Part shown: piece after piece, positions 593 to 52,010 of the stretch | Layout: every line of letters begins with the position of its first letter | Numbering within the stretch: position 1 is the first letter of the stretch | Assembly (NCBI GenBank): GCA_051294905.1 | Contig: CM119376.1 | Location: 5,456,001 to 5,520,000, forward strand | DNA: 64,000 bases | From: Botryllus schlosseri | Taxonomy: Eukaryota | Direction: 5' to 3' | Program-made: the position numbers and the translations under genes | The notes under the pieces: generated by a model | Database searches by the model: none | Told to the model about the DNA's origin: nothing | The model's input: the letters and a program-made list of their open reading frames with translations, nothing else

Positions 593-1588
593 TATACAAA
601 GCTCTTTCCAATTCTCTACTAATTTCTGACGATCACGCCGGACGAGCGTCATTTCAATTTGAATGTACATTTTACTCGTAATTGTAATTCTAATATAATT
701 TGTAAAAAATGTGTCCTAATGTAACTTGAAAAACACTGCGCTGCAATAATTATAATTATAATCTAATTTTAAAAGGCTAAAAAATATTGTAGCTGTTCAA
801 ATCTGCTAGCAAGGCATGGTAGCTGGTTGTATTGTTTGCAACCAAACTTCGACGGAAAACGTGATATTGCGTTCGAGTCATGAAGCCGAGAACAAGGAAG
901 TAAACGTCAGCGCACCACGGGTGAGGTGTAAATTCGCGGTCTGCCAGAAAGCGGAGGGTGGAAATTGCTCATCTGGATTGCAATCTTAGTTTCCCCTCCC
1001 ATCATCGGACTGGGCAGCGTGATTTCCCAAAATTTGTTTGATAATGTAAAACACGCTATCTGGCAATCGAGTGGTCAACCGCCGTGCGTCAAGTTCGTAA
1101 ATTCCAGATGTAAGACACTCAAGCCTAACTACAGCATAAATGGGTTGCCTGGTGGCGCTATGCTTTGCATTTACTCCTTAGCAATTTAATCGTGTTATTG
1201 TACCATACGCCTGTCAGGACAATTATCCCTTGCTGAAGAAAGAGTTTTGCATACAGACTCATATCAGATTCGTGTGACGCTAGCTGCTGAATCGCCTACT
1301 CAAAAATAATTTTGACAATTTGGGACGCACTGTGTCTCCCAAGTCGCGTGGATGGGTTTTGAAATATTGAGAATTTGGGACGCACTGGCACTATGTCAGC
1401 TACTTCTTTCAGCTACTCCGGTACTTTCCAAAAACCACAAACACCAACTAACTGCATACTAAGCCTACTTCTAAATTTAGCAATAATGATGAATTGGAGA
1501 GTCAATTTACTGCCATCTTTACAGATAGATGCATTCAATGTGTTGTAAACGTTCCCCACAGTTGCCGTTTGGATTTGGAACATCATAC

Positions 1589-3254: not shown

Positions 3255-3380
3255 GTGTGTATATGCCTGTACGCAAATTGGAATTTTACTAATTCTGGAA
3301 GAGAAAGAGTCACATTTGGTTGGTGGCATAGCAAGCGCCTCAGTCAAGAAATATAATTTTAGAAAGCAGATTTGTACTTG

Positions 3381-3612
3381 AATAGTTTCTTAGAGGTACA
3401 GAACTTTAATATACAATTGATTAGTATATTCTTATTGAAATGAACTCGAATATTTTTCCCTGACGAGTGTCAGGCGTAATCGTCAGAAACTAGTAGAGAA
3501 ACTAGTACAATGTTCTTTCCCATTCTCTACTCGCTGCTGACGATTACCAATGACGAGTGTCAGTGTCAGCACAAAGTATTCGACCGCATTTCAATATGAA
3601 TATACCATTCAA
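3381..3612 (-). mobile_element. Family D hammerhead-bearing repeat (degenerate, fold-back copy)
   Basis: Reverse arm 3381-3500 and forward arm 3506-3612 head-to-head; flanks ATTTGTACTTG / ATTTGAACTTT (9/11). Confidence 0.65.
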
Positions 3613-4406
3613 ATTTGAACTTTTGAATGTACTTTTGAAAGTTCGATTAAAGACTAGTATCACTAAGTTATCAGTATCTTCGAATTTAGAGATTTGGGGG
3701 GTTTGAAACCCCTCCCATTTAAAACTTGCGCTGAGGTTCGTGTTCGATTGTAATAAAATGAAAATGAACGAGTTGCTTCAGAATCTACTCTAGTTGTGTT
3801 TTCTCTGGTTAATTGATGATTTTAGAGGGACGTTAGTTCTAGTTCTGCATTTTGATAATCCTGTCCAGAACAGGCAACTGCCATTGCCGGCCGGCACCAC
3901 GGAAGGAAACCAGTCCAGTCAAGTTCTTCGCTGCGGTTTCGTCAAATCGTTATTCATCGATTGTGTAAAGTGCCACCGATCGGCGATGAATCAATCCTGG
4001 ATATCGCGAGTTTAATTGAGGATAATCCAACCGATCGGTCCAATTCAAATCAGGAAACGATCAAGAAAAGTTTAAACATAGAGTCCATTCTCCTATCGCA
4101 TGCGGTACTCGACAGGTGACAACCGCAAATCATCAGTAAAAGATTATTGGATAAAATGAAGGCTTGCAAATGCAAACTCAAATGTACGGTCGATCGGCGA
4201 AACCGATCTGAGTCATAGCCTGTAATTGGTCGATGGTTTCAGGGATGTGAAGTCTGAGTTGAATTTTCATTAAATTCTCTCCAGATGTCACAGAGACTGT
4301 GTAAAACCCTTCAAAGAACGGGAGAAACACATTCTGGTTGGGGCAGGAATTTGTTAAAATGCTCCAACTACTTTAAAATCAAACCAAACGTTCTCAAATG
4401 TTACTA

Positions 4407-4606
4407 TTGAGTTGTATGTTCGGATTCAAATTCGAATATTTTCGGCTGACACTCGACACTATACGATTGTTGATGTACAATGTTCCTTCCAATTCTTTAC
4501 TAGTTGCGTACGATCACCACTGACGAGTGTCAGCCGAAATTATTCGGGTTTATTTCAATATGAATATACTAATCAATTGTATATTGAGTTACTCGAAGAA
4601 GCTCTT
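4407..4606 (+). mobile_element. Family D hammerhead-bearing repeat (fold-back copy)
   Basis: Truncated reverse arm then forward arm ending AAGAAGCTCTT; flanks CAAATGTTACTA / CCAATGGTACTA (10/12); core CTGACGA-G-TGTCAGC-C-GAAA-TTAT-TC-GGGT at 4520-4549. Confidence 0.7.
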
Positions 4607-5269
4607 CCAATGGTACTAAAATGTTTCTGCAAGCTACAAAAGTTATTAAGAGCTTCTCGGAGGTACAGAAGAAGAAGCTATTAAATTCTTTTCAAAATTC
4701 ATTTCTGCGAGCACAATTTTGTTTAATTAGAAAAAAAATGGTCGAGTCAATACGTAATATTAATAACTGAAAATGTGATAGTAAACGTATATTTTTCTGA
4801 GTAGATTCACCATCATAGTTGGAATGGGAGTTCTGGGAACAGAATCTTAGGAGTCGTATTCGATGCGTTAGAAGTTTCGGGTGTCATAGTCTCCGCAGAC
4901 TTGCACTATAAAATTTTCCGTCTTTTCCAAATTAGAGTAGCATTAGAGTTAGTGAGTTCACAAAAACTTGGAAATTGAATTGAATTTAGAATTATAATAA
5001 AAAATTAAGCTGAGCGTATTTCGCACTATACAGTTCTCCTGTAGCGTTTCAAATAATACCAGAAATTAAATTCAAATCAGAACACAGAAACTTCTCCAAA
5101 TTAGCTTAGAGTTAGATTGCAGGGATTTCACTTTAATTAGTATACGGTAATGAAGACAACTAGAATTATGTGGTTGTCCAAATCTTGTGGTTGGTATACT
5201 GAGAATACCTTCTGAGTTGTAGTTCACGGTAAATGCCTGCAAATAAAAGCTAACGGAAGCCTTATATAC

Positions 5270-6669: not shown

Positions 6670-7849
6670 CTGCAAAAAAGATATCCAAACTAAATGACTT
6701 CAACACGCTTTTAAAATCAAGGTCGAAATGCAATGAATAGCAATTGGTTATGTTCAACTTTACAAAATTATTTTAAAGTATGCCGCTGATAGCATGTCAC
6801 TTACAAAAGTGAAGTTCCCACATCAATCTGTGAACAGCCATGCACAAATAGCACATCTAACACGCATGCAATACAATTAAGCTTCCCAGCCACTGTGCAG
6901 GAGTCATACAGGACATTGTTGACAATGAATACTAGCCTACGACGCATGTAACAACATACAATAATACATAAAGTATTCGTTCATTGCATTTGCGCAAGCG
7001 TTTGTGAGTAAATGCTTTAAAATCGGAGCAAAATTAATCGTGTTACGAAATCAAACCATCGCATTAACTGTGAATAAAAAGCTCTGGAAATAGACGTAAG
7101 ATGGTATCGTTATAATACTCCTACTCAGTAAATATGTGCAGTGTACAGCAAATAACTTGATAATGATGCTTAGCACAGAACCAAAAACTGGTTTCCAACC
7201 ATTTTTGAATAACAGGCCAGTATCATCGAAGCCTGGAAACAAATTTGACTAATGTTTGAAATTTAGTGACTAACATCGTGACAAGCACATCATAATCTAA
7301 TCAACTGGTGTCCTGAATACATTCGCACTTCATTTTCCAATGATATATTTTCCATGGAAGGCCATTGGACATGGGATAATAATACAGGCAACAATTGTTG
7401 ATTTACGGTAATGTTCTTTCCAATTATCTACTAGTTGTTCACGGAGTGTCAGCCTGTCGTGGTTATTTCAATATGAATACATTATGCAATTGTATAGGCC
7501 TATTGAGAGACTGTGTACAGTATATTTCACTCATGAATTTTTCAATTATTCCATGCTATGCTGACACGCAGTTCCAACAGATGACATAACGACTAGAATT
7601 GAGAAACTGTGGATACAGGGTGAACAAACAGGGATACTCTGACCAAGATAAGATATTACAAAGCTTCATACAATCTTGTTCACCCCACTTCAACTAGCCT
7701 ACTTCAAAGATCAGAGACTAACTAGGTTAATCTGTAACCATACACTCAGATAACACCAATAACTGGGAAGTGAAAAAGGGATCCATCATGCTTGCGTTAC
7801 ATATGACACAGCAAGTCAAGCCCCTTGGGATTTCCTTATTGAAAGGATG

Positions 7850-8950
7850 GATTTTCAACTAGGTCGCCGGTGTCAGAGAAAATGATTTATACCAGAACAG
7901 CAACATTAAAGACAGCTCTCAACCTGTTGCTGGTGCTGATATTTACATACATCTAATGGCTTTCGGAATTACATACAGAAAAAGCTCCTCAATCGTCAAA
8001 ACATCAACAACCAGCAATCCAGATAGGATGGAATTTCCAATTCTCTACTAGTTGCTGAAGATTAACCCTAATGAGTGTCAGCCGAAAACATTCAAGTTCA
8101 TTTCAATCATGAATATATTACTCAATTGCATGTTGAAGCTTTTCAAATACAGATATTGAACTCTCAAATTCCAAATGGTTGTTTGGATAACACTATCAGG
8201 CTATAACGACGGGTGATATAATAGATGATGAATCATAGAGACTGCATCCTAATTAGGGCTATCAGTGGATCATTGGAAAGTGAGAAATATCCTGTTTCAA
8301 GATTGAATTACTCCAGACAGGAAGGTAAGCTAGAGGCCTATAACAATTTGCTGCATCACTAATCGAAGACCATAACCAATGGCCAGTGCTGGTAATCTAG
8401 TTGGAGGATTTCTACGAACATCGGACATTAGTTGAGTCACCTACTAATCTTTATTTTAAACTATATACCGGTAAACAGAATTACGGGAGAACACAAAAAT
8501 CTTTTAAAATAGATCCACACCCATCAGTTACTAGAAACATTAGGATATTGGTAAAGTAAACCAAAAGCAGTCAAGGTAGGGAGGATGCTGTAAACTACAA
8601 AGGCTACAAATTACAAGATCAGCTACAATCGAGAAATAGTTTCAGTGGTTAGATTGTCAGCGGTTTCATTTCGTAACATATTAAAGACTTGGAATATCTT
8701 GCTTAACCTAATTAGCGATTTTTCCAATCCTAAAATTCATAACCTTCAACTGATTTTATCTCACAAACCCAATACAATATATCAGTCGTGGCTGCTTATA
8801 ATTGGAACCCGCCAAAGGTAATCTCGAAATTTAGATATCAAAATCGTGTATGACCAATTTTCAAGAAGCTTGCAGAAAACATTTTAAGCTAACCAGAGGT
8901 TCCAATCACCAATTTTGTTCGCAGAGAATAGTGCTAGTGATTGACAGTTT
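7850..8950 (-). mobile_element. Highly degraded non-LTR (LINE) reverse transcriptase remnant
   Basis: RT-like fragments in the expected order and spacing across broken frames: TTDILY, VAFVVY, DVRR...LVMQQI, YLDC, GAFSV...NISTSNRLRAVFNVAVL; interrupted by a family D fragment at ~8030-8150. Confidence 0.4.
8030..8150 (+). repeat. Family D fragment with mutated hammerhead core (CTAATGA)
   Basis: ttccaattctctactagttgctgaagattaaccctaatgagtgtcagccgaaaacattc matches the family D consensus; another fragment at ~7397-7500. Confidence 0.65.
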
Positions 8951-12829: not shown

Positions 12830-14939
12830 CTACGCCAAATAGGTAGAATATAAGCCACAAGTGTATAAAGTGCTCTTCAACCATTTTAAATATATATATG
12901 TCCATAAACTAAGAGAGGATTCTAATCGAGTCATGCCAGTAACTTCACCGCCATAAGCTCTTAGGCCAAGCAAAGGTATTTATGAAATCATGTATATTAA
13001 AACGTGGGCATGGGTTGTACACCACTGAACATTAAATTTAACCAATAACAAACACAAAAAACTAAAGCATCAAGATGATTTTTTGATGCCCAATTCCAGG
13101 GCTTTTGAAACTGCGGGTCCCCAACCTGAATTTACGTTTCAAGACCTTCCGGTTTGGGTTGCAAAATACTATCGATTTAACATGAATAAAAGCATCGCAA
13201 TAATGAAATTTTAATTGATTTGTTGTTCTCAATACAGGGCATTAGGTTTCATAGCGAATTGATATATTTATCCGCCAATAAGTTTTATACATGAAGTTTC
13301 ATATATTCATTCATTTATATATATTTTTATCGGTCCAATAATACACTAGATACCAGTATCGATTAAATGAGAAACTACGATGTTTCACTCCTGCAATTGA
13401 CACAAGAGCAATCAATCCTTCAATATTGATATTTATTGTATGGTATTTTTGATGAAATAACATCACTAATAAATTACTTTATCTTGAGACTTCAAAGCAG
13501 TTTTTTAGTCTCGCTGAAAAGGATTTCGGAATCTCTGCTCTTTTGTATTAAATCTGCCATCGATAGCATGTTTGTGTCTGAGTGGAGCTGTAGTATGCCT
13601 GGGAATTGATGTAGTGAGATAGGTTGTGTTTCGCAGATCGCATCCTACTGGGAAGCTTCCTGTACAGAGGCTAGTGACAAGAATTCAGGCTGCAACGGCG
13701 TGAAAATACAAAAATAGCAATCAAACGTGGCGCTTGGCATTCAACTCGAGACCAAATGCTTCCAATGCCACCTCATAGATAGCCAATGAGGAATTAGTTG
13801 AAACCTGTCTGCTTCATAGTAGCAACAACAAAGCAATACGTAAACTCGTTCCAATTTCAAACTGGCATGACAACTGAAGTTAATAAGAAATCTCCACACT
13901 TTAGATTCATCATCATTTCTGTGGTAATAACTTACATGGGCGTAATCAATTAAATATATATTCCACTGTATTTAAATTATAGTCTACCTGATACCATATT
14001 TTAACCAATTATTACGAATCAACATCTTGGACAAATTGAGTCAATATTGGCAAAGCACTAAACAAAATTTTACAATGTCAGCTACATCCCTGTCAATTAC
14101 AGTAACAAAAGTTATTATACGGCAATCAATAAGTGCCCGGCAGATCGGAGCATGAGAATAGCGAATGTCTGTACAGAAAGCTTGGCTTGTTTCGCGCTAC
14201 ACAGTTCTGCTGTAGCAATTGCAGAAAACCAGATATCACATTCGAATCAATATTAGAGCATAGACACATTTCATAAATAAGACTGGAATCAGAATTAGAG
14301 CAAAGAAACATTTAACAAATTATATTATAATTTGATTACCGGCACTTCGCTTTAATTAGTCTAGTTAGGAAACTAGAATCAACTAGCTGTGCAAGTCTGC
14401 CTAAGAAATTAGGCCTATCCAAGTTACATGTAAAAACACAACTCCACTTGTATCAAGGAAATAACAATCACACTAGGGACTTCCCCAGCTGGGTATTTAC
14501 CCAAAAAAGCGGCTGAACAATAAAGGCCAATCAATTTCCACCGGTTTACATTTACACTGAACGTGAAAGCTTTGATTATTTTTGATAGGTTTGATGGATT
14601 TTGTTATGAATTTTCTTTGAAGAGCATACTATTGGTATGAATTGGGAATTTACTGTAAAATAATAAAAGATGATACACTTAAGGAAATCAGCAATCACAG
14701 TGATTCAGAGCAGCGCAGATAACCACATGTCAGATCCAATGGCAAAGATTTTAATATCAAGATTATAAGTCTTTTCACGGAATGTTCAAAGCACAATGAA
14801 TCACAGACCATAGGAGTGGCAAAGTAGGCTACTATATACATACGACCATATTGAAATAAAGCCAAATATTTTCCGCTGAAACTCATCAGGGGTAACCGTC
14901 AGCAGCTAGTAGAGAATTGGAAATTATAAACAAAAATAC

Positions 14940-20736: not shown

Positions 20737-20869
20737 ATGCGCGGCGTGTGAAAATCTCCTATGAGCGTGTTAATAATCTGCTGAGTCTTTTTTTAATAAA
20801 GTATATATATATTTCAAATGCATCTATGATTATTTCTTTGATGCCCAGTTTTGCTGCCATTCAGTTTTA

Positions 20870-21037
20870 ATTAAATAGTATATTCATATTGAAATGAACC
20901 CGAATATTTTCGGCTGACACTCATCAGGGGTAATCGTCAGCAACTAGACGAGTGTCAGCCGAAAATATTCGGGTTCATTTCAATATGAATATACTATTTA
21001 ATTGTATATTGAAGTTCTGTACCTCCAAGAAGCTCTT
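20870..21037 (+). mobile_element. Family D hammerhead-bearing retroposon-like insertion, best-preserved copy
   Basis: Perfect 12-bp flanking direct repeat CATTCAGTTTTA (20858-20869, 21038-21049); 54-bp perfect inverted arms; right end AAGAAGCTCTT. Confidence 0.8.
20898..20931 (-). ncRNA. Minimal type I hammerhead ribozyme motif
   Basis: Minus strand reads ACCC-CUGAUGA-G-UGUCAGC-C-GAAA-AUAU-UC/GGGU: full catalytic core, 4-bp stem I, 1-bp stem II, palindromic AAUAUU stem III; predicted cleavage between 20902 and 20901. Confidence 0.75.
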
Positions 21038-22086
21038 CATTCAGTTTTAGTTGATTATTAACAATTTTATCAGATCCATGCACCACAAGATTGGGATACA
21101 ATGAAAAGATAGGGAGGAGCCTAGAGGCGGTCAAAGTAGTCAAGAAAGCTACTCAGTAGAAGTAGAAGTAACGACGGAAAATCTACTCAAGTACTAGTAT
21201 AAGTAATTCTTCCATAAGCAACCTAAAACTACTTGAAGTAGAATTGACTGACTTTAAATCTACTCAAGTAAGTAAGTAGTTGTGAAAACGATCATAATTC
21301 GTTCGCATCACTGTAGTACCCTGACAGGGCCGTAACTTCCGCACCTCAATCCCCACTTGTGGAGCGAGCTGGATGGCGGCCCATATAATTATTTTGTAAA
21401 TCGTATACATATATATAGTTAGCCTACATATGATGTTTCGGTTACGATGCGACTCCGCGAAGTGTGTTGCCAAAACGGTCGGAAATGGCAGTCGCGTTTT
21501 GGCCGTAACCTTCGATATTCAATATTGTCCATAGAATCCTCAAGGGCCCGGTCCGAATAGTCCTGTTCTGACAATTTGAACCCCACAGTACAAATGCCAC
21601 CAGAAGAGAAAATGATCCGCCCGTAAAGAAATGTAAATTTGGAGCCGTGTGCATCTTACAAATCAAGTTATTCTTTTAGTTTGGTCTTGTACGTTTGGGC
21701 GATTCCAATATCTTTTTGACTAGCTGAGGGAGGTCACGAAATTACAACATGCTGAAGATGTATAATTAATAATTGCTTGCCATAAATTTTCAAACACTCA
21801 ACCTTCCTCAGCTCTACCGGTACCGGCATGGGTGGCCCAAGACCAGCGTTTTTGGGGTTGACGAAGTGCTGTTTCGGTCACACACATCAGAATGATTACA
21901 AAAGTTGGGTTTGGTTTGATCACTCGTTATTTTGATTCTCCAGGTCGTAATCGTCAGATTATATATTTTCATCAGATCAACATACACAATGCGATGCACA
22001 AGACACAATGCGATAAAATGCACATGAACATATAGGAGGATGCCCAAACTACCAGTTGCGGTCTCTTAATCTGGCATCTACCTCAG

Positions 22087-47561: not shown

Positions 47562-47709
47562 CGATAGTTGATATACAATGTTCTTTCCAATTCTCTACTT
47601 GTTGCTGACAATTACCCCGACGAGTGTCAGCCGAAAATATTCGGGTTTATCTCAATATGAATCTACTATTCAATTGTATGTTGAAGTTCTGTACCTCCAA
47701 GAAGCTCTT
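47562..47709 (+). mobile_element. Family D insertion, single arm, hammerhead core mutated
   Basis: Perfect 10-bp flanking repeat CAAGATGATA (47552-47561, 47710-47719); ends AAGAAGCTCTT; core reads ACCCC-GACGA-G-TGTCAGC-C-GAAA-ATAT-TC-GGGT (U4 lost). Confidence 0.8.
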
Positions 47710-51211: not shown

Positions 51212-51814
51212 ATATTAACTCATGTAACAGTAATATCAACATTGCTGTAAACAGATGTCTGTCAGCAGGTTTAACAGGTACTGAAAAATATGATCATCTG
51301 GTGCATTTTCACAGTATCTTCCTGTGCTGCGCCGATCTTTTTTGCTTAGCCATGCATTAGTATCGTAGAAAAATCATACCTGGCATATACCTGTCCATTT
51401 AACAAGGTAATCAAGAATCTCGAACGGTTCGTTGCTGGGTTTTTCAATTTAACTAGCATCTTATATGCAATGGCTGAAGATTGTTTTGAACCATGTCGTT
51501 GGTGCCAAGATGCGACGACTGTCACTGTCAATCATATCGCATATCATCTTGTAATATTATTATCTACTGGTCACAACACTACATCCCTTGCAAGAATATA
51601 TCTCTTTAAACTCTATCAATTTTTGGGTGCCCCTTACCAAGACTTATTGTATTGACACGCTAATTCTGCTTGTTACGTCATACACTTTACTGTATTGGTC
51701 ATGCTTCAGAATCTGTTGGAATACCTTTCGGGTGTCGATAATTCTCGATAAGAGCCACCCAAAATGTCTTCAAATATGAAGACATGTAGGCCTATTCAAT
51801 ATAGAATTGAATAT

Positions 51815-52010
51815 TAGATTCCTATTTGAAATCAACCCAAATGTTTTTGCCGGACACTCGTTATCGTCATGGGCAATCGTCAGCAACTACAGAATTCACA
51901 AGAATTTGTGTATTAATAGTGACGAGTGTCAGCTGAGAATATTCAGGTTAGTTTCTAATATAATATTACTATTCAATTGTATATTGATTTTTGTACCTCA
52001 GAGTGTGCTC
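51815..52010 (+). repeat. Family D, degenerate fold-back copy between ERI3 and SF3B1
   Basis: Reverse arm (…ggacactcg…cgtcagcaacta) then forward arm (gtgacgagtgtcagctgagaatattcagg…caattgtatattg). Confidence 0.6.

What the first reader, a model, noticed from the sequence alone, without database searches (positions are those of the whole stretch)
20870..21037. Dispersed short retroposon carrying a minimal hammerhead ribozyme (family D)
Seen: a ~150-230-bp repeat occurs about 10 times (~600, 3381-3612, 4407-4606, ~7400, ~8030, ~14870, 20870-21037, 47562-47709, 51815-52010). Its conserved centre is ACCC-CTGA(T/C)GA-G-TGTCAGC-C-GAAA-ATAT-TC-GGGT, the topology of a type I hammerhead with a 1-bp stem II and a palindromic stem III. 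Copies share a fixed end (AAGAAGCTCTT) and have variable 10-12-bp flanking duplications (12/12, 10/10, 10/12, 9/11). Four copies have a truncated inverted copy of themselves at the variable end. Established: minimal dimer-acting type I hammerheads, variable TSDs and inverted truncated 5' segments are hallmarks of Penelope-like elements and their pseudo-LTRs. Inference: this is a non-autonomous, ribozyme-processed, Penelope-mobilised RNA element (retrozyme-like) that is dispersed and fold-back rather than tandem. No autonomous partner is present in the window.
Basis: partly seen in the sequence, partly recalled or inferred. Interest (0 to 1): 0.85.

Follow-up and report, generated by a model that had tools for sequence, protein, structure and literature searches.

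The report
Truncated Penelope retrotransposon tails with pseudoknotted hammerhead
The repeat is the last 60-230 bases of broken copies of an ordinary self-sufficient Penelope-like retrotransposon, and its hammerhead ribozyme motif is real but builds its second helix in an unusual way, by pairing with a box just upstream.

Summary
About ten copies lie in the window. They show a fixed 3' end, variable 10-12 bp target duplications and four fold-back copies.

The copies are not a separate non-autonomous retrozyme or SINE. They are the short end of a continuous 5'-truncation series of an autonomous Penelope-like element (PLE). Its unit is about 2,682 bp, with one 845-aa RT plus GIY-YIG-like ORF, and it occurs as a partial tandem elsewhere in this 495-Mb genome. 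The 34-nt ribozyme core occurs 3,142 times exactly.

The motif lies 17 nt upstream of the element's own start codon. The same 43-46 nt architecture sits upstream of the start codon in all 12 related elements I looked up (40-63% protein identity). There are compensatory changes in helix I, in the C3-G8 core pair, in 10.1-11.1 and in the palindromic helix III. There are also compensatory changes between "loop 2" and a 5-6 nt box upstream of helix I. Helix II is therefore most likely a pseudoknot, not 1 bp.

More distant relatives have the ordinary hairpin helix II. Cleavage is untested, and RNA-seq shows no ends at the cut site. Earlier notes of this scan describe the same pseudoknot on other pieces of this genome.

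The parts
20870..21037 (+). One composite PLE insertion (168 bp): an inverted 5' segment followed by the sense 3' terminal segment.
   Evidence: It is flanked by a perfect 12-bp duplication.
20858..20869 (.). Left target-site duplication, CATTCAGTTTTA.
   Evidence: read directly.
21038..21049 (.). Right target-site duplication, CATTCAGTTTTA.
   Evidence: read directly.
20870..20946 (-). Inverted, truncated copy (unit positions about 2570-2648). It stops about 34 nt short of the element's 3' end, so it lacks the 'tail'.
   Evidence: 98.7% identity to the L076 unit. The same stop is seen in genome copies.
20947..21037 (+). Sense 3' terminal segment (unit positions 2592-2682), 100% identical to the full-length copy in L076.
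20898..20941 (-). Complete 44-nt hammerhead motif. Sub-parts: box P 20941-20936; linker 20935-20932; helix I 5' strand 20931-20928; core CUGAUGA 20927-20921; 10.1 at 20920; unpaired N at 20919; box P' 20918-20913; 11.1 at 20912; GAA 20911-20909; palindrome AAUAUU 20908-20903; C17 at 20902; helix I 3' strand 20901-20898.
   Evidence: The architecture is supported by covariation.
20947..20974 (+). 5'-truncated hammerhead (starts at G5; lacks P, the helix I 5' strand, C3 and U4). It cannot be complete.
20985..21037 (+). Start codon and first 17-18 codons of the PLE ORF (MNILFNCILKFCTSKKL). In a tandem copy these read on into the next unit.
   Evidence: The N-terminus is conserved in relatives.
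21004..21037 (+). 34-nt 'tail' present only at the sense end.
   Evidence: Compare the PLE tail in PMC8557442 and PMC11167929.
47557..47711 (+). Simple 5'-truncated copy (about 154 bp, 94% identity) with a 10-bp duplication, CAAGATGATA. Its hammerhead at 47604-47646 has lost U4.
4402..4607 (+). Fold-back copy: inverted part 4402-4458, sense part 4461-4607.
4648..4670 (-). 23-bp scrap of the element's 3' tail.
3379..3612 (-). Fold-back copy on the minus strand: sense part 3379-3500, inverted part 3506-3612. In the sense part the loop of the CUGAC/GUCAG hairpin is reverse-complemented.
51795..51999 (+). Old fold-back copy: inverted part 51795-51916, sense part 51920-51999. It lacks the last 14 nt.
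593..651 (+). Old fragment (unit positions 2544-2602).
7391..7496 (+). Old fragment (72% identity).
8034..8138 (+). Old fragment. Its core is mutated (CUAAUGA).
14847..14923 (-). Old fragment.

Best explanation
Family D is the 3' end of dead, 5'-truncated insertions of an autonomous, C-terminal-endonuclease Penelope-like element. Many of these insertions also carry an inverted 5' segment.

**Shown**
- The unit is about 2,682 bp and occurs as a partial tandem (pseudo-LTR).
- Its single 845-aa ORF (RT plus a GIY-YIG-like domain) starts inside the upstream repeat, 17 nt after the predicted ribozyme cut. It reads across the unit junction.
- Insertions share one 3' end and have variable 8-14 bp target duplications. 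These duplications also enclose the inverted segment, so each composite insertion was one event.
- The inverted arm stops 24-36 nt before the 3' end. This is the PLE 'tail' signature of two reverse-transcription start sites.
- The last about 110 nt hold a 43-46 nt type I hammerhead motif. Its order is P (5-6 nt), linker (3-4 nt), helix I 5' strand (4 nt), Y3-U-G-A-N-R8-A, 10.1, one unpaired N, P' (5-6 nt), 11.1, G12-A-A, a 6-8 nt palindrome from A15.1 to U16.1, H17 (the cut), helix I 3' strand.

**Inferred**
- Helix II is the 10.1:11.1 pair stacked on the P:P' helix. P takes the place of the 10.x strand and P' the place of the 11.x strand.
- The single N crosses the deep groove, as in an H-type pseudoknot.
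- The short linker ties the far ends of helices II and I together, doing the job of the usual loop-loop contact.
- Two motifs pair through the palindrome and cut as a dimer.
- Cutting would free an RNA that begins just before the AUG, for translation or for circularisation. Uncut RNA must be the insertion template, because genomic copies extend 63 nt past the cut site.
For: **Identity of the element**
- The family is real and abundant: at least 1,831 candidate copies and 3,142 exact copies of the 34-nt core, against 0 for the reversed control.
- Truncation series.
- Full-length partial tandem and ORF.
- Protein evidence: RVT_1 at E=3.5e-9. GIY-YIG scores E=0.021 in this protein and 1.4e-4 at best in 3 of 10 relatives. 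852 homologues were found, most with RVT_1, DUF8422 and HTH_animal.
- Many other intact PLE ORFs lie in tandem and head-to-head arrays in the genome.
- Target duplications enclose inverted plus sense parts in L011, L013, L016, L018, L020 and L028.

**The motif in relatives**
- The motif lies just upstream of the likely start codon in 12 of 12 relatives looked up. In L170 it overlaps the gene caller's ATG and I take the next ATG as the real start. It is also present in two metagenome loci.
- In the scan of 87 metagenomic loci there were 12 hits, against 0 in 20 shuffles.

**Covariation**
- 226 of 227 cells are paired over 15 lineages. Each P:P' position shows 3-4 pair types. 10.1:11.1 appears as GC, UA, AU and CG. 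C3:G8 appears as CG (9) and UA (6).
- The tool count on 10 sequences gives 100% paired, 13 of 15 pairs with changes on both sides, and a score of 0.90 against at most 0.17 when slid.
- Spacings are fixed: N is 1 nt in 15 of 16 lineages, there are 0 nt between P' and 11.1, and the linker is 3-4 nt.

**Phylogeny**
- Pseudoknot-type and hairpin-type elements fall on opposite sides of one branch with 100% support.

**Literature**
- PLE min-HHRs in pLTRs, and the U3-A8 variant: PMC4209133.
- The tail and internal initiation of reverse transcription: PMC11167929.
- Complex inverted and tandem insertions: PMC8557442.
Against: - No Rfam hammerhead model matches, even at E<=10 on 156-311 nt. This is expected for a motif without a hairpin helix II, but it is still a failed test.
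- Self-cleavage was not tested.
- In bulk and single-cell RNA-seq no pile of molecule ends was flagged at either predicted cut site. Most reads come from dispersed truncated copies read through in host transcripts, and depth over the ORF body is near 0-10.
- Published PLE min-HHRs cut poorly in vitro, and cleavage was dispensable for insertion by an Anolis PLE (PMC4209133, PMC11167929).
- Covariation cannot tell one pseudoknotted fold from two alternating folds.
- Part of the sequence set was found with a scanner that required pairing. However, the 12 looked-up relatives were first inspected without requiring any pairing.
- The PLE clade name is not established.
Confidence: 0.85

Rival explanations
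1. One reading: a separate non-autonomous, ribozyme-processed short retroposon (retrozyme or SINE-like) that borrows PLE enzymes.
For: Short copies dominate the window. In the 30-locus sample, four copies start at the same point, 144 bp from the 3' end. Retrozymes are thought to derive from PLE pLTRs (10.64898/2026.07.22.740005, PMC7229834).
Against: - The copies form a continuous truncation series up to the 2,682-bp coding unit, with the same 3' end and 92-100% identity.
- The short copies contain the element's start codon and first 17 codons.
- None of the window copies or the sampled genome loci is a short-unit tandem array.
- The window's sense copy at 20947 even starts inside the ribozyme core.
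Confidence: 0.06
2. The hammerhead has only a 1-bp stem II. P:P' is then a separate, mutually exclusive hairpin: an 'off' state that hides helix I's 5' strand and the core, or a protein or RT recognition hairpin. On this reading P:P' is not part of the active ribozyme.
For: Covariation shows only that each pairing forms at some time. In lineages with N7=C, P' can also pair with core nucleotides C3-C7 (CUGAC...GUCAG), so conformational switching is plausible. PLE min-HHRs are weakly active (PMC4209133).
Against: - The strict spacings fit the stereochemistry of a coaxial pseudoknot better than that of a free hairpin. These are one unpaired N, no nucleotide between P' and 11.1, and a 3-4 nt linker, all held across lineages that share no other sequence.
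- Sister lineages have a 4-6 bp hairpin helix II in the same place, so a long helix II appears to be needed.
- Minimal hammerheads without helix II are nearly inactive (established knowledge).
Confidence: 0.2
3. A fold-back DNA transposon (MITE) whose hammerhead-like core is a chance match.
For: Four window copies are near-perfect inverted repeats.
Against: - Most copies have no inverted part, and one end is fixed while the other varies.
- Duplications vary from 8 to 14 bp.
- The two arms are unequal, because the tail is present at one end only.
- The sequence continues into an RT ORF.
- The motif is conserved with covariation in 16 lineages.
Confidence: 0.01

Closest known systems
Minimal hammerheads (min-HHR) in the pseudo-LTRs of metazoan Penelope-like elements (Cervera & De la Pena 2014, PMC4209133)
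   Same: - Type I block order and location in the pLTR.
- A 4-bp helix I.
[quoted passage not shown]
- A palindromic helix III that implies dimers.
- The U3-A8 core variant.
- Thousands of dispersed copies from truncated elements, some facing each other on opposite strands.
   Different: Helix II is not a hairpin. Only 9 nt lie between A9 and G12, and its second strand is supplied by a box 5' of helix I. The unpaired nucleotide lies after 10.1, not before it. Such motifs escape hairpin-based descriptors and Rfam.
Non-circularly permuted hammerheads, types SGC, CSG and GCS (Eckert et al. 2023, PMC10085705)
   Same: The core is built with pseudoknots instead of a plain three-way junction. A linker of about 3 nt joins one strand of stem I directly to one strand of stem II, which probably holds the two stems side by side.
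   Different: Here the three conserved blocks keep the classic type I order (CUGANGA, then GAAA, then the cut site). Only the distal 10.x strand of helix II is moved. The published types come from metatranscriptomes and viroid-like contexts, not from animal PLEs.
Metazoan non-LTR retrozymes (PMC7229834; 10.64898/2026.07.22.740005)
   Same: They carry a type I hammerhead, are related to PLEs and occur in the same kinds of genomes.
   Different: Retrozymes are non-coding tandem repeats of 170-400 bp with canonical hammerheads, expressed as circular RNAs. Family D copies are dispersed truncations of a coding element.
Poseidon PAc of Anolis (Frangieh et al. 2024, PMC11167929), and ribozymes placed before ORFs (HDV-like ribozymes in R2 and other LINEs; viral hammerheads, PMC13725137)
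   Same: The ribozyme sits directly at the ORF start. There is a tail between two reverse-transcription start sites. The insertion template must be uncut.
   Different: In PAc the ORF begins inside the ribozyme. Here and in relatives the AUG lies about 3-65 nt after the cut. A role in translation is only an analogy.

Membership tests
Penelope-like element (EN+) | Reverse transcriptase ORF of PLE type | tested here: met
   RVT_1 at E=3.5e-9. PLE-like motifs DKG and Q-DG-AMGSPLGP are visible in the ORF. 852 homologues were found.
Penelope-like element (EN+) | C-terminal GIY-YIG endonuclease | tested here: inconclusive
   Pfam GIY-YIG scores E=0.021, below the curated cut-off, for this protein. 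3 of 10 relatives match at up to 1.4e-4. The motif VVYEY..C.C.C.YVGRT..R..QH is visible.
Penelope-like element (EN+) | Partial tandem (pseudo-LTR) organisation | tested here: met
   In L076 a partial copy is followed by a full unit, at 99% identity over 2,196 bp with a 2,683-bp period. The ORF spans the junction.
Penelope-like element (EN+) | 5' truncation, adjacent inverted 5'-truncated copy, variable target duplications, 30-40 bp tail at one end | tested here: met
   The inverted arms end 24-36 nt before the 3' end.
Penelope-like element (EN+) | Named clade (Penelope/Poseidon, Neptune, Nematis, Hydra) | not testable with these tools
   No reference PLE sequences were available. The DKG motif is present (Hydra has DKT), and I saw no CX2-5CxxC linker by eye. 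This suggests a Penelope/Poseidon-like element, but only tentatively.
Hammerhead ribozyme, type I | Conserved core: C3-U-G-A-N-G8-A, G12-A-A, A15.1-U16.1, H17 | tested here: met
   The core is present in 16 lineages, with C3-G8 to U3-A8 covariation.
Hammerhead ribozyme, type I | Helix I flanking the core and the cut site | tested here: met
   4 bp, with 3-5 pair types per position and 100% paired.
Hammerhead ribozyme, type I | Hairpin helix II between A9 and G12 | tested here: not met
   Only 8-10 nt lie between A9 and G12, and no hairpin is possible. It is replaced by 10.1:11.1 plus pairing of the intervening 5-6 nt with an upstream box.
Hammerhead ribozyme, type I | Match to the curated Rfam hammerhead models | tested here: not met
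   No hit at gathering score or at E<=10.
Hammerhead ribozyme, type I | Site-specific self-cleavage | not testable with these tools
   RNA-seq gave no pile of ends at the predicted sites. That is weak evidence, because the libraries and the mapping are dominated by dead copies.
Non-LTR retrozyme | Non-coding short tandem repeats, each with a canonical type I hammerhead | tested here: not met
   The copies are dispersed truncations of a coding unit.
MITE / fold-back DNA transposon | Terminal inverted repeats with a fixed-length target duplication | tested here: not met

The most novel reading that the evidence does not exclude
A whole subclade of animal Penelope-like elements uses a natural hammerhead topology that I did not find described in the papers available to me. 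The distal 5' strand of helix II has moved upstream of helix I, which gives a doubly pseudoknotted 44-nt ribozyme. This ribozyme would be catalytically active as a dimer and would cut a few to some tens of nucleotides before the element's start codon. It would thereby produce the translated, or circularised, form of the element RNA.
Probability: 0.4. Interest if true: 0.7.

Novelty: new variant of a known kind. Interest (0 to 1): 0.5.

Why it matters
The repeat itself is ordinary: truncated PLE copies carrying a minimal hammerhead have been known since 2014. What deserves attention is the ribozyme's build.

**A different build of helix II.** Covariation across 16 lineages indicates that helix II is made with an upstream strand instead of a hairpin. 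The change separates cleanly on the RT tree from relatives that have the hairpin form.

**What follows if the motif is active**
- It adds an animal, transposon-borne case to the recently discovered non-standard hammerhead topologies.
- It would explain why descriptor and Rfam searches miss hammerheads in some PLEs, which are then reported as 'core only'.
- It gives a compact 44-nt test object for how stems I and II are held together.

**Link to open questions.** The constant position just before the AUG makes the long-open question of what PLE hammerheads are for directly testable. The candidates are processing, cap-independent translation and circularisation.

Tried and rejected
- **Rfam.** I tried the gathering threshold on the window and E<=10 on 9.9 kb, 156 nt and 311 nt. 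No hammerhead hit appeared, only chance miRNA, snoRNA and UTR matches.
- **First guess at the full length.** About 206 bp, then about 1,350 bp, looked like the full length because several copies start there. Both were rejected when longer copies were found.
- **Steric objection to the pseudoknot.** I first thought P:P' and 10.1:11.1 could not coexist. I dropped this after re-deriving the geometry. A single nucleotide has to cross the deep groove of a 5-6 bp helix, which established pseudoknot stereochemistry allows. This remains an inference.
- **Alternative cores and a maxizyme-like dimer.** A hammerhead built on the first CUGACGA (inside P plus the linker) finds no fitting helix I or II. A maxizyme-like dimer through helix II does not work because the segment is not self-complementary.
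- **Further genome loci.** A genome-wide length census was therefore not possible.
- **Literature.** PMC5785218 (Lunse et al. 2017) is not held. A search for ascidian PLE hammerheads found nothing.
- **RNA reads.** No ends were found at the cut sites. I treat this as uninformative, not as negative evidence.
- **Structure-based alignment.** MAFFT misplaced the rows with 8-nt palindromes or a 5-nt P'. The 15-row statistics therefore rest on my own structure-based alignment, and the tool count rests on the 10 rows that align cleanly.

Full report
**1. The observation**

The region 20870-21037 is a 168-bp insertion flanked by a perfect 12-bp duplication, at 20858-20869 and 21038-21049. Its left 77 bp are the reverse complement of part of its right half. 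A 20-nt core pattern hits the window 9 times at up to 3 mismatches, against 0.01 expected. The only intact hammerhead-like motif in the window is at 20898-20941 on the minus strand, with the predicted cut between 20902 and 20901. The other motifs are truncated or mutated.

**2. What the repeat is**

The window lies in a 495.5-Mb genome, at G000:C6:5456001-5520000.
- A search with the 145-bp copy gave at least 1,831 candidate copies, the best at 92-95% identity.
- Most of these continue upstream beyond the window copies.
- Walking upstream gave a graded series of 5' ends: 144, 152, 173, 190, 204, 248, 294, 343, 409, 550, 864, 1023 and about 1,350 bp, and beyond. All share the same 3' end...CCAAGAAGCTCTT.
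- Longer copies encode the C-terminal part of a reverse transcriptase and a GIY-YIG-like motif.
- In L076 (G000:C17) a partial copy is followed head-to-tail by a full unit, with 99% identity over 2,196 bp and a period of 2,683 bp. One uninterrupted frame of 857 codons crosses the junction.
- The first ATG of that frame lies in the upstream repeat, 17 nt after the predicted ribozyme cut. It gives an 845-aa protein.
- That protein hits RVT_1 at E=3.5e-9 and weakly hits GIY-YIG, at E=0.021 for this protein and 1.4e-4 at best in 3 of 10 relatives.
- It has 852 homologues at E<=1e-10, typically 830-865 aa on 2.6-3 kb contigs.
- The first roughly 25 residues, which are encoded in the 'family D' tail, are conserved in relatives.
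- The genome also holds many other intact 853-861-aa PLE ORFs in tandem arrays with a period of about 2,778 bp, and in head-to-head arrays.

Family D is therefore the 3' end of truncated copies of an autonomous PLE, not a separate short element. In the window itself only the first 19-21 codons are present.

**3. Insertion signatures**

In a sample of 30 genome copies, 14 show target duplications of 8-14 bp. In L011, L013, L016, L018, L020 and L028 the duplication encloses the inverted plus the sense part, so each composite was inserted in one event. Inverted arms end at unit positions 2646-2658 of 2682, which is 24-36 nt short of the 3' end. This matches the PLE 'tail', which was explained by two adjacent internal reverse-transcription start sites in an Anolis PLE (PMC11167929). 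It also matches the complex tandem and inverted insertions described for PLEs (PMC8557442). Most 3' flanks, and the target duplications, begin with CA(A), which is also what follows ...CTCTT in the tandem junction. I read that as target preference or microhomology; this is an inference. The 34-nt core occurs 3,142 times exactly in the genome, against 0 for the reversed control. Many of these occurrences form close minus/plus pairs.

**4. The ribozyme motif**

Rfam finds no hammerhead, even at E<=10 on very short stretches. I therefore compared relatives.
- I fetched the contigs of 12 homologous proteins with 40-63% identity. In all 12 the same architecture lies just upstream of the likely start codon, although the flanking sequence is unrelated. 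In L170 it overlaps the gene caller's ATG, and I take the next ATG as the real start.
- Two further instances came from a metagenome scan.
- A pattern scan of the 87 metagenomic loci gave 12 hits, against 0 in 20 shuffles.
- The motif reads, in order: P (5-6 nt), linker (3-4 nt, usually starting with G), helix I 5' strand (4 nt), Y3-U-G-A-N-R8-A, 10.1, one unpaired N, P' (5-6 nt), 11.1, G12-A-A, a palindrome of 6-8 nt running from A15.1 to U16.1, H17, helix I 3' strand.
- In a structure-based alignment of 15 lineages, 226 of 227 cells pair. Every P:P' position has 3-4 pair types and every helix I position has 3-5. The 10.1:11.1 pair occurs as GC, UA, AU and CG. C3:G8 occurs as CG (9 times) and UA (6 times). 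None of 2,000 shuffles reached the observed pairing.
- The tool count on the 10 rows that MAFFT aligns cleanly gives 100% paired cells. 13 of 15 pairs change on both sides, and the covariation score is 0.90 against at most 0.17 for slid partners.
- The U3-A8 core variant, the conserved 10.1-11.1 pair, the 4-bp helix I and the palindromic helix III are the published traits of metazoan PLE min-HHRs (PMC4209133).

The motif is therefore a genuine PLE hammerhead motif and not a chance match.

**5. Helix II**

My model is an inference. P' continues directly, with no intervening nucleotide, into 11.1, and so occupies the 11.x strand. P occupies the 10.2-10.7 positions. The single N bridges the deep groove of this 5-6 bp helix, which classical pseudoknot stereochemistry permits. 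The 3-4 nt linker leads from the top of helix II to the top of helix I. The result is a 6-7 bp quasi-continuous helix II with one unpaired nucleotide near its 5' base. That is the same shape as the long hairpin helix II of other PLE min-HHRs, but with different strand connectivity. The fixed spacings across lineages support this model.

More distant relatives, at 30-38% identity, have the ordinary hairpin helix II at the same place. On an RT tree the 13 pseudoknot-type elements and L170, whose motif was found only afterwards, sit on one side of a branch with 100% support. The 6 hairpin-type elements sit on the other side. The root was chosen by me, so the direction of change is not shown.

The nearest published parallel is the set of non-circularly permuted hammerheads, in which a 3-nt linker also ties stems I and II together (PMC10085705). 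I found no description of this arrangement in PLEs in the papers I could search or read. Lunse et al. 2017 could not be read.

The rival reading is that P:P' is an alternative 'off' hairpin. It is not excluded, and I give it 0.2.

**6. Function**

Cleavage is untested. I laid bulk and single-cell RNA reads on L076:1600-4700.
- Depth is concentrated on the last roughly 200 bp.
- In the bulk run 98% of the reads run on into unlike flanks, so they come from dispersed dead copies inside other transcripts.
- The ORF body has a depth of about 0-10.
- No pile of molecule ends was flagged at the predicted cuts, at L076 positions 1741/1742 and 4424/4425.

This agrees with the need for a dimer implied by the palindromic helix III, and with the Anolis PLE, for which no reads end at the ribozyme site (PMC11167929). 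It is not a test of activity.

Genomic copies extend 63 nt past the cut site, so the insertion template must be uncut at its 3' ribozyme; this follows directly from the sequence. The constant position of the cut, about 3-65 nt before the AUG in all lineages, suggests one of three roles: processing of read-through or tandem transcripts, production of a translatable RNA, or circularisation. The translation idea is by analogy with HDV-like ribozymes of LINEs and with viral hammerheads (PMC13725137). The circularisation idea was proposed in PMC4209133. All three are inferences.

**7. Verdict**

The repeat family is an ordinary by-product of an active-looking PLE family, and the retrozyme reading is not supported. 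The hammerhead motif is real and belongs to the PLE min-HHR kind, with an unusual, well-supported pseudoknotted helix II shared by a subclade of PLEs.

I looked up earlier notes of this scan only after I had reached this reading. They report the same pseudoknot on other pieces of this genome. They are not independent evidence, but they do mean the scan has seen this before.

Noticed in passing
L076:8281-8592 (G000:C17, about 1.23 Mb into a 3.0-Mb contig): A degenerate telomere-like array (TTAGGG/CCCTAA-type units) lies a few kb from the tandem PLE copies, far from the contig end. It produced spurious Rfam miRNA and Hsp83-UTR matches.
   Followed up: no
window 3455-3480 (minus-strand copy): In this copy the hairpin CUGAC-GAGU-GUCAG of the ribozyme core has its loop reverse-complemented (CUGAC-ACUC-GUCAG). 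It looks like a small hairpin inversion or template switch.
   Followed up: no
protein P0070: A close homologue of this animal-type PLE protein is deposited as a reverse transcriptase of a Pseudomonadota metagenome-assembled genome. This is probably eukaryotic DNA mis-binned into a bacterial MAG.
   Followed up: no
L079, L081, L083, L085 and other 2.6-5.8 kb metagenome contigs: Many relatives sit on contigs of about one unit length whose ends repeat each other, or on contigs with 2-3 tandem ORFs. This is compatible with tandem arrays or with circular templates, and the data cannot tell which.
   Followed up: partly
G000, e.g. C6:30409425-30417512 and C11:890711-905412: There are other PLE families with intact 853-861-aa ORFs, in tandem arrays with a period of about 2,778 bp and in head-to-head arrays. 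The first look gave 4,673 candidate matches.
   Followed up: no
L076:4446-4553: In one single-cell RNA run, 19 reads from 14 starts show a 'goes back 108' joint with 6 extra letters, next to the upstream ribozyme. This could be a tandem duplicate elsewhere in the genome or a small circular or rearranged RNA.
   Followed up: no
window 47565 and loci L006, L011, L018, L028: Several copies begin at the same point, 144-145 bp from the 3' end. They begin with TAGTTG or AAGTTG where longer copies read TTGTTG. This may be a preferred truncation or template-switch site, or a subfamily marker.
   Followed up: partly
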